Origin: Rebecca billardiae RCC1528
Lineage: Eukaryota; Protista; Haptophyta
DNA: 64,000 nucleotides
Direction of reading: 5' to 3'
Assembly (NCBI GenBank): GCA_965240325.2
Contig: OZ251240.1
Coordinates: forward strand, 620,001 to 684,000
The translations under genes and the position numbers were made by a program. The notes below the pieces were generated by a model that saw only the letters and a program-made list of their open reading frames with translations, had not been told where the DNA came from and did no database searches. Below, piece after piece: positions 43,079 through 46,239 of the stretch (its first letter is position 1; each line of letters opens with the position of its first letter).

Positions 43079-43496
43079 GCGCTCCGCGCGGACGAGCGTC
43101 TCTGTGGCCCCGCCGTGCAGGCCACAAACTTCGTTCGCGCCCTTCGGGGGGTCCGCTGCAGTACGAGTTAGAGTCCTGAAGAACCACCCTGCTGCTGAAC
43201 AAGTCCTGCCACTGGGTCCTACACTGGTTCCGGTACAACACCGTCTCGTCAATCTGGTGGTACCTGTTTGAGTTGAGAAGCGGGTAAAAAGACGACAGTG
43301 GGTGATGAGGAATCCACTACACAGCCTTGTTTGGGATTCGGGAATCGTTCGCATCTTCTGTCGAAACCTACCATCATCAACGAAGTCATCAGCCAATCGT
43401 AGTGCAGAAACTTGCATCAAATTGCATCGCGGTCACACGGGCGTCGAGAGTTCGAGACCGTGCTGCACGAAGCTGTCCGCGACCGTCTCCGCGACC

Positions 43497-45899
43497 ATGT
43501 CGCAGGCGAACGAGCAGGGGTGGCGGACTGTGCGCGAGCAGCTCAGCGACGTGCGGCGTGCGGCGCGCAAGCGTCGGATTCTGCTCTCTGGGCCGCCCCT
43601 CGCGATCAGCTTGGTCCTCCTCACCGTTGGTGCCGTGCTGATCGTTGAATCGCTCACGGTTTTGATGAGCGCGCTCTGGATCGCGGGAGCGATGATGATT
43701 GCATTGTCGCTGCCGCTCGTGCTCCTGGCGCTGCTCCCGTCCGACAGCCGCGCCATCAAGTTTGCTGGCACCGCTATCAGCACCGCCGCTCTGATCCTCG
43801 GGTTCTATTGCCTCGGCCTGGCCCGGCTGGCGGCCGCGGCCTTCCGTACGCCCGCATGCAGCGCGACCGACCCGATCTACTCGGACTTCTTGCAGTATCT
43901 GGTGGTCGGGTGCTCGTGGATCGTTCTGAGCGCCTACGGCTTGTACAGCGTCGCGCAGGCGTTCCGTGGCCGGCTCTGGCCGAGCGCGCTCGGGCTGCGC
44001 CTCCACCGCATGCTGGGGATCGGGAACCTTGGCTTTGGCGCCGTCATCCTGTGGGGGACGGTGCAGCTCGTCCTGCGCTCGCCGCCCGTGTTCCGCACGG
44101 TGCACTTCGTGGGCAACGTCGTGCTGGGCACGTACGTCTCCGCGATCGGCGCGCTCGAGCTCACCAACGACGTGCGCGCGCGCCTGCACGGCTGGCTCGC
44201 CGAGCGCGGCGAGTTGATGTCCTCCGCCGCCGCGATTGCGGCGATGCTGCACAGCGAGGGCATCGAGGAGGTGCTGACGGGCGCGGCGTCGCGGATGCGC
44301 TGCGTGCGCGTGGACGCGCTCAAGCCGGACGACCTCCGCCGCAACGTCTACGCCCTCTCCACGCCCGCGCGCTTCGCCGACGTCGACGCGTTCATCACGC
44401 ACTCGCACCACGATCCACCCGCGCCCAAGTGGGCGGCGCTGCAGGCGTGGCGGCGGCAGTTTGTGCACACGCACGGCCGCGAGCCGACGGTGTGGCTCGA
44501 CACGTGCTGCATCGCGGTGGCGGAGGCGTGGACCGACGTTGCCAACCTGCCCTGCTACATCGCCGGCTGTAACGAGCTCGTCATCCTCGCCGGCCCCTCC
44601 TTCCTCTCGCGCATGTGGACGACGGTCGAGGTGTTCTGCTACACACACATGCGCGGCGCGACCGAGTCGATCACGCTGTACGAGCTGCCCGGCTTCGAGC
44701 GCGAGCGGGCGAGCGCGTCGTATGACGCGCACGCGTGCGTCGCCTCGCGCCGCGAGGACTACTTCCGACTGCTCGCGTGCATCGAGTCCGCGTGCGACGG
44801 CGGGATCGACGCGTTCAACTCTGAGATGCGAAGCCTGCTGCTGTCCGTGCCCGCTCGGCGCGCGGTCGCCGCCGCGGATGGCGGCGCTCCCGGGCCGTCT
44901 CGGCTGACGGCGGACGTCGCGCCGTTCGACGGCATCGTCCAGGTGGACCCCACTGCCGCCGACAACGGGGCCCAGCCCGAGCTCGAAAGCGGCGTCGCCG
45001 AGTTCGTGGTGCAGCCAGTGCCATCCGCGGGCGTCGCGCAGCAGCAGGCGGGCGGCGGCGGGCGAGCCGCCGCGCCGCAGCCGCGCGAGCTGGGGCTGTG
45101 GCGGCTCGTGCTGCACCGCCTGGCGGGGCGGCTGCCAGGGCGGGCGCGGCGGGCGCGTGGCGGTGACGACCATCTTGGCGCATCGCGCACCCGGGCACGC
45201 GTGGCCCGCCCTCCCGGCCCAGCCGCAGCTCAGGGCCGTTGCTCCCCGCGGGCGCGCGGCGTGGGCATCGCCCTCGTCGCTGCGTACGCCGTCGCCCTGG
45301 TGAGCGTGCTGGTGTGGGCGACCGCGCCCGCCGAGGCGGATTGCCGCGCGTGCGTGGCGTTCCTCGAGGAGCAGCTGCCGTCTGGCGGCGCGCGAGCCGG
45401 CGCGTGGCTCGCGCCCTCCTTCGCCAACCGCACGTCCGAGTACCCAAGTGAGTACCTCTTCTCGGGGCTGGGCGGATCGGCGCGCGCGGGCGAGAGCTCG
45501 TGGGGCGGCGCGCTGCGCGCATGCAGGGAGGAGGGCGGTAGCCTCGTCGCCATCGGCAGCGCCATCGAGGACCGCTTCGTGTACTGCGTGCAGCGCGTTG
45601 CGGCGTATGGCGCGTGGATTGGGTACACGCGTGCACGCCACGCCGATGCCACAGCCGGTGGCTGGGTGTGGGCGCGCGGCGCGCCGCTCGGTGGCAGCGG
45701 TGGAGGCACGCCAGCCTACCGCAACTGGGCGGAGGGCGAGCCCGCTGCAGACGGCGCGTGCGCGATCATCGGTGGGCAGCACCACGGCTGGTCAGCCGTG
45801 CAGTGCACTGCGCCTGCGCGCACATACTCCGACCTGCGCGCCTATGTGTGCGAGCGCGCGGCGCGGCCTGCACGTCGTCCCCCATCCTCGAGTGATTGA
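43497..45899 (+). CDS. 6TM + TIR-like domain + TM + C-type lectin domain protein (800 aa)
   Basis: Six hydrophobic helices. DAFITHSHHD..VWLDTCCI..LPCYIAGCNELVILAGPSFLSRMWTTVE. TM GVGIALVAAYAVALVSVLVWA. CTLD motifs SWGGALRAC..GGSLVAI..ED..WIG..YRNWAEGEP..C..W..VQC..YVCE. Confidence 0.85.
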   Translation: MSQANEQGWRTVREQLSDVRRAARKRRILLSGPPLAISLVLLTVGAVLIVESLTVLMSALWIAGAMMIALSLPLVLLALLPSDSRAIKFAGTAISTAALILGFYCLGLARLAAAAFRTPACSATDPIYSDFLQYLVVGCSWIVLSAYGLYSVAQAFRGRLWPSALGLRLHRMLGIGNLGFGAVILWGTVQLVLRSPPVFRTVHFVGNVVLGTYVSAIGALELTNDVRARLHGWLAERGELMSSAAAIAAMLHSEGIEEVLTGAASRMRCVRVDALKPDDLRRNVYALSTPARFADVDAFITHSHHDPPAPKWAALQAWRRQFVHTHGREPTVWLDTCCIAVAEAWTDVANLPCYIAGCNELVILAGPSFLSRMWTTVEVFCYTHMRGATESITLYELPGFERERASASYDAHACVASRREDYFRLLACIESACDGGIDAFNSEMRSLLLSVPARRAVAAADGGAPGPSRLTADVAPFDGIVQVDPTAADNGAQPELESGVAEFVVQPVPSAGVAQQQAGGGGRAAAPQPRELGLWRLVLHRLAGRLPGRARRARGGDDHLGASRTRARVARPPGPAAAQGRCSPRARGVGIALVAAYAVALVSVLVWATAPAEADCRACVAFLEEQLPSGGARAGAWLAPSFANRTSEYPSEYLFSGLGGSARAGESSWGGALRACREEGGSLVAIGSAIEDRFVYCVQRVAAYGAWIGYTRARHADATAGGWVWARGAPLGGSGGGTPAYRNWAEGEPAADGACAIIGGQHHGWSAVQCTAPARTYSDLRAYVCERAARPARRPPSSSD

Positions 45900-46239
45900 T
45901 TATTCAGTTTACTTTATATATAATATATATATATATATATACTCCATCCAGATGCAACGAGGAGGCGAGGCACATGCCGCGGGCAGGGCGGAGGAGCCAC
46001 GCCGTCCCCGGGACCACCCCTGCAGGCACCCCGCCACATCATCTGATCATGCCTTGAGAACTTGAGATCGATCTCGCGGAACTTATAATTAATTTAGGGT
46101 AATTTAGGCGGATGATCGGCTATGATATAGTTATAATTGATACTGTCTCTGCTGCTTTTTCTTGATGATCCGAGCTCGATCTCTCTCATCAGTCACTCTA
46201 CTCTCTATTATGAGTCTCTAACTCTCGTCTCTCTCTACT

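What the first reader, a model, noticed from the sequence alone, without database searches (positions are those of the whole stretch)
43497..45899. Candidate lectin-sensing TIR receptor: 6TM-TIR-like-TM-C-type lectin in one intronless ORF
Seen: six N-terminal hydrophobic helices, then an alpha/beta domain (~44380-44850) with the TIR-like pattern F[IL]xHS..D / W.D / SRxWxxxE. The Glu (codon 44628-44630) sits where TIR NADases have their catalytic residue. A seventh TM (~45260-45320) and a complete C-type lectin domain (~45490-45860) follow. Counting helices from an N-in start puts the TIR-like domain in the cytosol and the lectin outside. Known: TIR domains hydrolyse NAD+ or scaffold signalling in animal, plant and bacterial immunity, and CTLDs are glycan sensors. 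Inference: a Toll-like-receptor analogue in reversed orientation that couples glycan recognition (virus, bacteria or prey) to TIR activity in an alga. I do not know a described receptor with this architecture.
Basis: partly seen in the sequence, partly recalled or inferred. Interest (0 to 1): 0.9.

Follow-up and report, generated by a model that had tools for sequence, protein, structure and literature searches.

The report
Algal membrane TIR-like protein with lectin domain
This very GC-rich, haptophyte-like alga has an intact gene for a seven-helix membrane protein with a TIR/HET-type immune-signalling fold inside the cell and a C-type-lectin fold outside, so it looks like a surface receptor of a large unstudied protist family, though no activity or transcript has been shown.

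Summary
It encodes six N-terminal TM helices and an alpha/beta domain (aa 291-455). A seventh TM helix (aa 586-612) and a Pfam-significant C-type lectin domain (aa 667-774, E 5.8e-10) follow.

The middle domain gets no Pfam hit itself. It belongs to a family of about 4,000 cluster representatives. Members weakly hit both HET and TIR_2. Its AlphaFold model (pLDDT 90.5) matches only TIR domains (RUN1, RPP1, SARM1; Z about 11). The WxxxE motif (W374, E378) and all 12 family-invariant residues are kept. Charge distribution puts the TIR-like domain in the cytosol and the lectin fold outside.

The same domain order recurs in two divergent relatives. A permuted order (lectin-TM-6TM-TIR-like) occurs in Emiliania huxleyi.

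- The lectin domain lacks the canonical Ca2+/sugar site (EPA and WSA instead of EPN and WND).
- The TIR-like domain is unusually divergent within its family.
- No RNA data could be obtained.
- NADase activity is untested.

The scan has already noted the same architecture at eight or more other loci of this genome. My verdict is a real receptor-like gene and a new architectural variant of TIR-family receptors. The mechanism is inferred only.

The parts
43497..45899 (+). Whole coding sequence, 800 codons plus TGA; apparently intronless
   Evidence: ORF list and translation. GC3 is high in this frame throughout. It aligns collinearly with P0001 from Met1 to the C-terminus.
43497..43583 (+). Basic N-terminal tail (aa 1-29), predicted cytosolic
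   Evidence: 6 K/R against 1 D/E in the last 15 residues before TM1. It aligns with the N-terminus of P0001.
43584..44162 (+). Six-helix transmembrane bundle (aa 30-222)
   Evidence: Hydropathy. AF2 model mab0959dfefad, pLDDT 85.5, helices 2-55, 58-78, 84-116, 126-156, 164-194, 197-222. No PDB fold match, best E 0.5. Only haptophyte Atlas clusters match. Sequence is poorly conserved, 18% mean column identity.
44163..44366 (+). Conserved helical linker between TM6 and the TIR-like domain (aa 223-290)
   Evidence: Helices 224-237, 240-252 and 256-266 in the model. The family consensus AAAxIAxLxG...RFRxV lies here.
44367..44861 (+). TIR/HET-superfamily alpha/beta domain (aa 291-455), predicted cytosolic
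   Evidence: AF2 model m58630392615a, pLDDT 90.5, pTM 0.86. All 50 top Foldseek PDB hits are TIR domains. VIA-align Z is 11.3 to RUN1 and 11.1 to RPP1 and SARM1. Family members hit HET (42 of 58) and TIR_2 (37 of 58, best 1.3e-6).
44616..44630 (+). WxxxE motif, W374-T-T-V-E378; Glu378 is the putative catalytic residue
   Evidence: Sequence. E is invariant and W is 98% conserved in 58 family members. The profile aligns this E to the Glu of the TLR15/TLR2 WCxYE motif. It lies in helix 83-96 of the model, straight after strand 71-75.
44862..45251 (+). Low-complexity Ala/Gly/Arg/Pro-rich linker (aa 456-585), basic towards TM7
   Evidence: Composition. GC3 is 0.78-0.92. It is not conserved and is shorter in P0001. 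It holds no Met codon.
45252..45332 (+). Seventh transmembrane helix (aa 586-612)
   Evidence: Hydropathy peak 2.48. Charges are 3 K/R and 0 D/E before it, and 1 K/R and 4 D/E after it.
45333..45494 (+). Juxtamembrane stalk with conserved AP-x-x-A-D/E-C-x-x-C motif (C616, C619) and an N-x-T sequon at N644
   Evidence: The motif is shared by the window protein, P0001 and P0009. The sequon was found.
45495..45854 (+). C-type lectin-like domain (aa 667-786), predicted extracellular or lumenal
   Evidence: Pfam Lectin_C E 5.8e-10. PDB matches include DC-SIGN CRD at E 1.6e-7. Cys676, 755, 770 and 785 and the WIG motif are present.
45738..45746 (+). E748-P749-A750 at the place of the EPN/QPD sugar- and Ca2+-binding triplet
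   Evidence: Sequence and alignment. The relative P0009 keeps EPN.
45789..45797 (+). W765-S766-A767 at the place of the WND Ca2+-binding triplet
   Evidence: Sequence and alignment. P0001 also has GWS at this place.

Best explanation
This is a real, intact, probably intronless gene. It belongs to a large, mostly haptophyte family of multipass membrane proteins whose core is a six-helix bundle followed by a cytosolic TIR/HET-superfamily domain. This member, like a minority of relatives, adds a seventh helix and an outward-facing C-type-lectin-fold domain. The topology of that part is the same as in animal type II CTLD receptors. Shown: the ORF, the domains, the TIR fold, the retained WxxxE motif, the conserved architecture and a charge pattern that fits the proposed topology. 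Inferred: the protein is a surface receptor. A ligand bound by the lectin-fold domain is probably not a simple Ca2+-dependent sugar. Ligand binding would cluster the protein, or repack helix 7 against the bundle. That would bring the TIR-like domains together, as all known TIR enzymes and adaptors require. The assembled TIR-like domains would then cleave NAD+ or make a cADPR-type signal through Glu378, or trigger HET-like cell death, as a response to virus, bacteria or non-self cells.
For: ORF, motifs and coding signal. CTLD. TIR fold: pLDDT 90.5; top 50 PDB hits all TIR; NADases AbTir, RPP1, SNC1, RUN1, SARM1 and SPARTA among them; Z 11.3, covering model residues 2-172; bacterial TIR_2/ThsB clusters at TM 0.55-0.60. 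Superfamily membership by sequence: HET 42 of 58, TIR_2 37 of 58; the only PDB profile hits are SIGIRR and TLR15/TLR2 TIR domains, aligned on betaA and on the WC..E motif. All 12 family-invariant residues are kept, including E378. Topology: one search gives 15 K/R on predicted inner loops against 3 on outer loops, and an acidic stalk with an N-glycosylation sequon after TM7. The architecture is conserved in P0001 (35% identity in the pairwise alignment, collinear end to end) and in P0009, with a shared juxtamembrane Cys motif. An independent permuted fusion, CTLD-TM-6TM-TIR-like, occurs in E. huxleyi proteins. It again places the CTLD on the opposite side from the TIR-like domain. The same TIR-like domain is also fused to other sensor-type modules: HNOB, IU nucleoside hydrolase and TPR. 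This fits a role as an output domain. No Met codon lies after aa 444, so a separate lectin gene could not start in frame inside this ORF. Literature: the catalytic Glu is widely conserved, and many eukaryotic TIRs are active enzymes (bioRxiv 10.64898/2026.04.20.719644). G. huxleyi TIR genes with multi-TM N-termini respond to virus infection (PMC12489294).
Against: No transcript evidence: no RNA run was listed, and no close orthologue was found for a selection test. The window protein itself gets no Pfam TIR or HET hit. Its TIR-like domain departs from the family consensus at 13 of 46 columns that are at least 80% conserved, against a median of 2. The departures include W304H, Q341V and C375T. 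It also sits on a long branch. The domain could therefore be a relaxed or non-catalytic copy. The CTLD lacks EPN and WND. The 130-residue disordered linker between the TIR-like domain and TM7 cannot carry a mechanical signal. The position of E378 relative to catalytic Glu residues rests on motif and profile alignment and on offsets in structural ranges, not on a residue-level superposition. A conserved Glu does not guarantee activity: TLR2 has it and is inactive in vitro (bioRxiv 10.64898/2026.04.20.719644).
Confidence: 0.5

Rival explanations
1. The cytosolic domain works like a fungal HET domain or an adaptor TIR. It would be a non-enzymatic assembly or death module used for self/non-self recognition between algal cells (gametes, strains), not for pathogen sensing. 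The lectin fold would recognise a polymorphic surface protein.
For: More family members hit Pfam HET (42 of 58) than TIR_2 (37 of 58). The family's invariant HSxxD, WxDxxC and RLWCxxE blocks resemble the three HET blocks. HET mediates allorecognition death and its biochemistry is unknown (PMC10197012). The CTLD lacks the sugar site, as protein-binding CTLDs do. The scan notes many paralogues in this genome. The window copy is fast-evolving.
Against: The best sequence score of any member is to TIR_2 (1.3e-6, against 3.1e-4 for HET). All structural matches are TIRs, headed by NADase TIRs. The Glu is invariant in 58 of 58 members, as expected for a catalytic residue. PDB holds no HET structure to compare with, so the structural ranking cannot tell the two apart.
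Confidence: 0.22
2. It is a housekeeping surface protein, not an immune one. The lectin fold would bind the alga's own scale, coccolith or matrix polysaccharide or protein. The multipass core would signal cell-surface status, or merely anchor the protein.
For: CTLDs without EPN/WND serve many non-immune roles. The 6TM bundle is poorly conserved (18% column identity) and has no known fold match, as expected of an anchor. The head-to-head neighbour is a cNMP-binding cyclase, which could hint at general signalling.
Against: The TIR/HET superfamily is overwhelmingly tied to conflict and death systems. The family is large, diverse and shuffled with varied sensor domains, a pattern typical of immune repertoires. 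Haptophyte TIR genes with TM regions respond to virus within 0.5 h (PMC12489294).
Confidence: 0.15
3. It is a gene-model artefact. In a 72% GC sequence, long ORFs arise easily. The ORF would merge two genes, read through an intron in the low-complexity linker, or be an untranscribed decaying paralogue.
For: No RNA evidence. The linker is low complexity. At 45087-45230 the GC3 excess over GC1 and GC2 is lost. A 798-aa shadow ORF exists on the minus strand. A scan note on a paralogue speaks of a two-exon gene. The TIR-like domain is divergent.
Against: GC3 is at least 0.76 throughout and collapses exactly at the ORF ends. The collinear architecture, with TM7 and the CTLD, is kept in P0001 and P0009 at 28-35% identity. 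No in-frame Met is available for a separate lectin gene. The CTLD has no signal peptide of its own, so TM7 is needed to export it. All 12 invariant TIR-family residues and all four CTLD cysteines are intact.
Confidence: 0.08

Closest known systems
Toll-like and IL-1 receptors (ectodomain - one TM - cytosolic TIR)
   Same: An outward ligand-binding domain is coupled across the membrane to a cytosolic TIR-fold domain with a WxxxE-type Glu. The profile of the family aligns to the TLR15/TLR2 and SIGIRR TIR domains.
   Different: No LRR or Ig ectodomain. There are seven TM helices, not one. The TIR-like domain lies in a cytosolic loop upstream of the ectodomain. There is no Pfam-significant TIR match. 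It is an analogue, not a member.
Enzymatic TIR domains: SARM1, plant TNL/TIR-only proteins (RUN1, RPP1, SNC1, L6), bacterial AbTir, Thoeris ThsB, SPARTA
   Same: These are the best structural matches (Foldseek E down to 1.9e-4; VIA Z 9.5-11.3 over the whole domain). There is an invariant Glu four residues after a conserved Trp at the start of alphaC.
   Different: Sequence identity is only 8-16%. The family has extra invariant residues (HSxxD, K, WxDxxC, LP, C) not typical of TIR. The domain is membrane-tethered at both ends. Activity is untested.
Fungal HET domain (PF06985)
   Same: 42 of 58 family members give sub-threshold HET hits. The three-block pattern is similar. HET is itself reported as a remote TIR relative that keeps the Glu (PMC9153377, PMC10197012). 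A second, TPR-linked copy in this window mirrors fungal HET-repeat proteins.
   Different: No hit reaches the Pfam threshold. The window copy lacks the Gln of the WxDxxCxxQ block. The domain is membrane-embedded, not soluble or NLR-linked. The host is an alga, not a fungus.
Gephyrocapsa (Emiliania) huxleyi TIR-domain genes responsive to EhV infection (PMC12489294)
   Same: They are haptophyte proteins with an extracellular region or multiple N-terminal TM helices, followed by a TIR domain with the conserved Glu. They were proposed to be receptor-like.
   Different: That paper reports no lectin domain and no TIR-TM-ectodomain order. I could not check whether its genes belong to this very family, because no supplement is held.
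Animal type II C-type lectin receptors (DC-SIGN, CD23, Dectin-like)
   Same: The topology is cytosolic N-terminal signalling part - TM - stalk - C-terminal CTLD. DC-SIGN and CD23 CRDs are among the best sequence matches.
   Different: The cytosolic part here is a whole 6TM-plus-TIR-like module, not a short ITAM or internalisation tail. The EPN/WND Ca2+ site is absent.
Bacterial Lectin_C + TIR_2 proteins (ESM Atlas cluster, 51 members, Bacillota)
   Same: The same two Pfam families occur in one protein.
   Different: Feature score is only 0.67, with 80 of 256 shared features, so they are probably unrelated fusions. They are about 465 aa, and no 6TM core was seen. I did not examine them further.

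Membership tests
TIR superfamily (Pfam TIR PF01582, TIR_2 PF13676, ThsB_TIR PF08937) | Flavodoxin-like fold: five parallel strands betaA-betaE alternating with helices | tested here: met
   In the AF2 model (pLDDT 90.5), DSSP marks four main strands (aa 8-12, 42-44, 71-75, 102-106) alternating with helices, plus a short terminal strand at 163-165. All 50 top PDB hits are TIR domains. Z is up to 11.3 over model residues 2-172.
TIR superfamily (Pfam TIR PF01582, TIR_2 PF13676, ThsB_TIR PF08937) | Sequence match to a Pfam TIR model at or above its gathering score | tested here: not met
   There is no TIR hit for the window protein even at E<=1. The best family member reaches E 1.3e-6 to TIR_2. 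Every TIR_2 score I saw printed for relatives was below the 28-bit cut-off.
TIR superfamily (Pfam TIR PF01582, TIR_2 PF13676, ThsB_TIR PF08937) | Catalytic Glu at the start of alphaC, usually as W-x-x-x-E (enzymatic TIRs) | tested here: met
   W374 and E378 are present. E is invariant in 58 of 58 members. It aligns to the Glu of the TLR15/TLR2 motif. It lies in helix 83-96 after strand 71-75. Its offset from the start of the SARM1 alignment agrees within 2 residues with E642. No residue-level superposition was possible.
TIR superfamily (Pfam TIR PF01582, TIR_2 PF13676, ThsB_TIR PF08937) | NAD+ cleavage or cyclic ADPR-isomer synthesis, dependent on self-association | not testable with these tools
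   This needs a biochemical assay.
HET domain (PF06985) | Pfam HET match at gathering score, with three conserved blocks | tested here: inconclusive
   42 of 58 family members give weak HET hits (best E 3.1e-4). The window copy gives none. The blocks HSxxD, WxDxxC and RxWxxxE are present, but the Gln of block 2 is Val341 here.
C-type lectin-like domain (PF00059) | Pfam match above gathering score, four core cysteines and the WIG motif | tested here: met
   40.3 bits against a cut-off of 22.6. C676, C755, C770 and C785 and WIGY are present. PDB CTLD matches.
C-type lectin-like domain (PF00059) | Ca2+-dependent carbohydrate site: EPN or QPD triplet plus WND triplet | tested here: not met
   The window protein has EPA (aa 748-750) and WSA (aa 765-767). 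P0001 lacks both triplets too. P0009 keeps EPN only.
Toll-like receptors | LRR ectodomain, single TM, C-terminal TIR | tested here: not met
   There are no LRRs. There are seven TM helices, and the TIR-like domain precedes the ectodomain.
Unnamed protist 6TM + TIR/HET-like family | Six-helix bundle, conserved helical linker, then a domain with invariant H, S, D, K, W, D, C, L, P, C, G, E | tested here: met
   The profile search finds 3979 representatives. All 12 invariant residues are present. The N-terminal regions align. Atlas neighbours are haptophyte clusters at TM 0.76-0.81 and at feature scores 0.95 and 0.93.

The most novel reading that the evidence does not exclude
Haptophytes and other marine protists may possess a large, independently invented class of pattern-recognition receptors. 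In it, an exchangeable ectodomain (here a C-type-lectin fold, attached on either side of the core) would gate a multipass membrane TIR/HET enzyme. That enzyme would make an NAD+-derived second messenger, or kill the cell, on contact with virus or bacteria. The six-helix bundle could itself be the effector, for example a channel opened by the TIR product. That would also give the long-enigmatic HET-type domain a biochemical function.
Probability: 0.15. Interest if true: 0.85.

Novelty: new variant of a known kind. Interest (0 to 1): 0.6.

Why it matters
Haptophyte blooms and their collapse under giant-virus attack shape ocean carbon and sulphur cycles, yet no algal virus or microbe sensor is known. 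A membrane protein with a recognisable ectodomain wired to a TIR-type output is a concrete, testable candidate. The E378 mutant, ectodomain pull-downs and knock-outs are all ordinary experiments. The family also sits between TIR and fungal HET in sequence space. It could therefore show what HET-type domains do chemically, and how TLR-like receptor logic arose more than once.

Tried and rejected
- **Direct sequence searches of the middle domain.** Pfam found nothing and PDB phmmer gave only noise (14-3-3, E 1.7). Only profile and structure methods revealed the fold.
- **RNA evidence.** The look-up of sequencing runs listed no run, so read laying was never used.
- **Close orthologues for a selection test.** The metagenome-contig scan gave one weak CTLD-only hit, L004.
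- **Homologue searches.** Two further homologous-protein searches, on the CTLD region alone and on the window+P0001 profile, added nothing new.
- **Viral contigs.** No relative of the TIR-like domain was found. The BFVD fold search gave only a Tetraselmis virus TIR/WD40 protein at E 1.9e-4.
- **PADLOC defence models.** There was no hit for the window domain. One relative gave ThsB at E 0.024.
- **Fold of the 6TM bundle.** No PDB match: the best is a designed six-helix barrel at E 0.5, and GPCR rows are at noise level. I rejected a GPCR or channel assignment as unsupported.
- **Second PDB attempt for the Glu.** phmmer with relative P0046, meant to get a residue-level alignment to an NADase TIR, found nothing.
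- **Upstream in-frame ATG at 43305.** I rejected it as the start. GC3 is at non-coding level there, and P0001 aligns from Met1 at 43497.
- **Minus-strand 798-aa ORF, 43389-45785.** I rejected it as a GC-rich shadow of the plus-strand gene.
- **Synteny with P0001.** Its neighbours are cyclin-domain genes, and none are shared with the window.
Full report
**Observation**

The plus strand holds an ORF that is open from 43302. An in-frame ATG lies upstream at 43305. Third-position GC there is at the non-coding level (0.44-0.72). It rises to 0.76-0.98 from about 43470 to about 45800 and then falls to about 0.45. The N-terminus of the best homologue aligns from Met1 at 43497. The high GC3 persists through the Ala/Gly/Arg/Pro-rich linker (aa 456-585), so nothing suggests an intron or an intergenic gap. 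One 150-nt stretch (45087-45230) loses the GC3 excess. The 798-aa ORF on the minus strand is the usual shadow of a GC-rich gene.

- FITHSHHD at aa 299-306
- WLD at aa 333-335
- SRMWTTVE at aa 371-378
- Glu378 = gag at 44628-44630

**Membrane parts and topology**

Hydropathy finds six helices within aa 27-222 and one more at aa 586-612. An AlphaFold model of aa 1-295, built on 45 homologues, gives a six-helix bundle followed by a three-helix linker (pLDDT 85.5).

Counting Lys and Arg, the predicted inner segments carry 15. These are the N-tail, loops 2-3 and 4-5, and the stretch after TM6. The outer loops carry 3. The 15 residues before TM7 hold 3 K/R and no acid. The 15 residues after it hold 1 K/R and 4 acids. 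An N-x-T sequon follows at N644.

This supports N-in, the TIR-like domain in the cytosol and the lectin fold outside or lumenal. No dedicated topology predictor was available, so this remains a rule-of-thumb result.

The bundle has no significant PDB match (best E 0.5). In the ESM Atlas it resembles only haptophyte clusters. Its sequence is weakly conserved (18% column identity).

**The middle domain**

Pfam and PDB sequence searches with the window sequence alone find nothing. A profile of five homologous domains finds 3979 cluster representatives at E<=1e-3 and 756 at E<=1e-30 in 1.84 billion proteins. Most are 450-550 aa, with the domain after about 300 N-terminal residues. That is the same 6TM-plus-domain core.

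Of 58 aligned members, 42 give weak hits to Pfam HET (best 3.1e-4), 37 to TIR_2 (best 1.3e-6) and 10 to TIR. The profile's only PDB sequence hits are the SIGIRR and TLR15/TLR2 TIR domains. They are aligned on the betaA motif and on the WC..E motif.

The AlphaFold model of aa 291-470 is confident (pLDDT 90.5, pTM 0.86). It shows alternating strands and helices. All 50 best Foldseek matches in PDB are TIR domains, headed by AbTir, RPP1, SNC1, SPARTA, RUN1 and SARM1. VIA-align gives Z 11.3 (RUN1) and 11.1 (RPP1, SARM1) over nearly the whole model. Atlas neighbours are haptophyte clusters at TM 0.76-0.81, then bacterial TIR_2/ThsB clusters at 0.55-0.60. The fold is therefore TIR.

**Catalytic residue**

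Twelve residues are invariant in the 58-member alignment, and all are present here: H302, S303, D306, K311, W333, D335, C338, L351, P352, C358, G366 and E378.

E378 lies four residues after W374, in the helix that follows the third strand. This is the place of the WxxxE motif of enzymatic TIRs. That statement rests on my knowledge of SARM1 W638/E642 and AbTir W204/E208, and on the general statement in bioRxiv 10.64898/2026.04.20.719644.

In the VIA alignment to SARM1 (model 5-170, chain 561-687), the offsets of E378 and E642 agree within two residues. I could not do a residue-level superposition.

One caution applies. The window copy departs from the family consensus at 13 of 46 columns that are at least 80% conserved, against a median of 2. 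It is second only to P0004. The changes include W304H, Q341V, L373M and C375T. It also sits with P0001 on long branches. A conserved Glu does not prove activity either: TLR2 has it and is inactive in vitro (same preprint).

**The lectin domain**

Lectin_C matches aa 667-774 (E 5.8e-10). PDB matches include PLA2R, DC-SIGN, the mannose receptors and CD23. The four core cysteines and the WIG motif are present.

Sugar-binding CTLDs have EPN or QPD, and WND. This protein has EPA (aa 748-750) and WSA (aa 765-767). P0001 lacks both motifs too, while P0009 keeps EPN. Canonical Ca2+-dependent monosaccharide binding is thus unlikely, so 'glycan sensing' is not supported. The ligand may be a protein or another surface.

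**Is it one gene?**

No RNA run was listed, so this rests on comparative and sequence evidence.
- P0001 (722 aa, GC-rich metagenome contigs, one ORF) aligns collinearly from Met1 to the last CTLD cysteine at 35% identity in the pairwise alignment. The alignment includes TM7 and a juxtamembrane AP-x-x-A-D/E-C-x-x-C motif.
- P0009 (563 aa, N-terminally incomplete, from a less GC-rich organism) has the same TIR-like - linker - TM - Cys motif - CTLD order.
- No Met codon lies after aa 444. A separate lectin gene therefore has no in-frame start, and the CTLD has no signal peptide other than TM7.
- The Atlas holds haptophyte clusters with feature scores of 0.95 (710 aa, 56 members) and 0.93 (576 aa, 116 members, 22% with Lectin_C).

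**A permuted version**

P0142 is 757 aa. Its cluster includes UniRef100_A0A7S3T5T7, named a C-type lectin domain-containing protein of Emiliania huxleyi. It has an N-terminal CTLD (SP-D CRD, E 1.2e-5), one TM helix, a basic loop, six more helices and then the TIR-like domain.

P0173 (858 aa; Lectin_C at 82-166, E 3.7e-5) has the same order. Its cluster includes the E. huxleyi CCMP1516 fragment EOD18331.1.

In both orders the lectin fold ends up on the opposite side of the membrane from the TIR-like domain. This is independent support both for the N-in/C-in topology of the six-helix core and for a functional coupling.

On a quick tree of the 58 domains, the window and P0001 pair (SH-aLRT 95) while P0142 lies elsewhere. 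One origin of the label is not excluded by starred branches.

**Other partners of the domain**
- P0004 joins it to an inosine-uridine nucleoside hydrolase domain.
- P0003 carries a second, HET-like copy at its N-terminus.
- An Atlas cluster joins it to HNOB.
- P0005 is a tandem duplicate of the whole 6TM-plus-domain unit.
- This very window holds a TPR_10/TPR_12 protein whose aa 179-354 match the family profile (hhalign probability 96.9%, E 1.6e-10).

A domain shuffled among sensors in this way behaves like an output module.

**Mechanism**

All of this section is inferred. TIR domains act only after self-association, which is established for SARM1, plant resistosomes, bacterial filaments and TLR adaptors.

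Here the TIR-like domain is tethered on both sides. The N-terminal tether is a conserved helical linker to the bundle. The C-terminal tether is a 130-residue disordered segment to TM7 (65-75 residues in relatives). A mechanical relay through that segment is implausible.

I therefore favour ligand-driven clustering, or repacking of the lectin-bearing helix against the six-helix core. This is consistent with that helix being attachable on either side of the core. The assembled domains would then use E378 to cleave NAD+ or make a cADPR-type signal, or act as a HET-like death module.

I put the receptor-with-TIR-output reading at about 0.5. The rivals are:
- HET/adaptor-like allorecognition, 0.22
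- a non-immune surface role, 0.15
- a gene-model artefact, 0.08

**Comparison with what is known**

It works like a TLR or a type II C-type lectin receptor, but it is a member of neither. It has no LRR, it has seven helices, it gives no threshold TIR hit and it has no sugar site.

It is a member of an unnamed protist 6TM-TIR/HET family. A 2025 paper on Gephyrocapsa huxleyi reports virus-responsive TIR genes with multi-TM or extracellular N-terminal parts and a conserved Glu. It reports no lectin fusion (PMC12489294), and its supplement is not held. I found no paper describing a CTLD-TIR membrane protein in algae.

The organism was not identified. The nearest relatives and Atlas clusters are haptophyte. 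No near-identical protein is in the collections, so it is not E. huxleyi CCMP1516.

**Earlier notes of this scan**

The same 6TM-TIR-TM-lectin layout was noted at eight or more other places of this genome. Three follow-ups reached conclusions like mine. I treat these as leads. They suggest a paralogous family here, which I could not inspect.

**Verdict**

It is a new architectural variant of TIR-family receptors. Interest is moderate to high because it gives a testable candidate for pathogen or non-self sensing in ecologically dominant algae.

Noticed in passing
window:6651-8654 (+): A 667-aa ORF. Its aa 179-354 match the same TIR/HET-like family profile (hhalign probability 96.9%, E 1.6e-10; it keeps FWLCDFCIRQ and a ...CVQE Glu). 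Six or more TPR_10/TPR_12 repeats follow. It has no TM helices and no NB-ARC hit. It resembles fungal HET-repeat proteins.
   Followed up: partly
window:35093-43420 (-): A giant GC-rich ORF (2776 aa as listed) with two cNMP_binding domains, an adenylate/guanylate cyclase domain and a weak AAA_16 match. It lies head-to-head with the receptor gene. The listed ORF ends only 77 nt from ATG 43497, though its real start is probably further in. No functional link was tested.
   Followed up: partly
window:46222-48197: Downstream of the gene lie a (CT)42 microsatellite and several arrays of a 22-nt unit (GGTACTGCTGCGCGCATGGTAT and its complement). These create many spurious ORFs on both strands. A short (TA)n run follows the stop codon directly at about 45915-45945.
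   Followed up: partly
P0004 (metagenome protein, 1137 aa): An inosine-uridine nucleoside hydrolase domain (E 9.8e-8, just under the Pfam cut-off), six TM helices and a very divergent copy of the TIR-like domain lie in one protein. This is a possible hint that the family handles nucleoside or nucleotide chemistry.
   Followed up: no
P0005 (1110 aa) and P0003 (883 aa): P0005 is a tandem duplicate of the whole 6TM + TIR-like unit, from a low-GC organism. P0003 carries an extra soluble HET-like block (..LSYGW....FWDFGC....RGWCVFE..) in front of its 6TM + TIR-like unit.
   Followed up: no
ESM Atlas clusters (no ids): A haptophyte cluster of 89 members joins a heme-NO-binding (HNOB) domain to this TIR-like fold (TM 0.79). 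A bacterial (Bacillota) cluster of 51 members combines Lectin_C with TIR_2.
   Followed up: no
window:28719-29771: A scan note calls this a SLATT/DUF4231-like membrane effector. My single attempt to translate the plus strand hit three stops. I did not pursue it.
   Followed up: no
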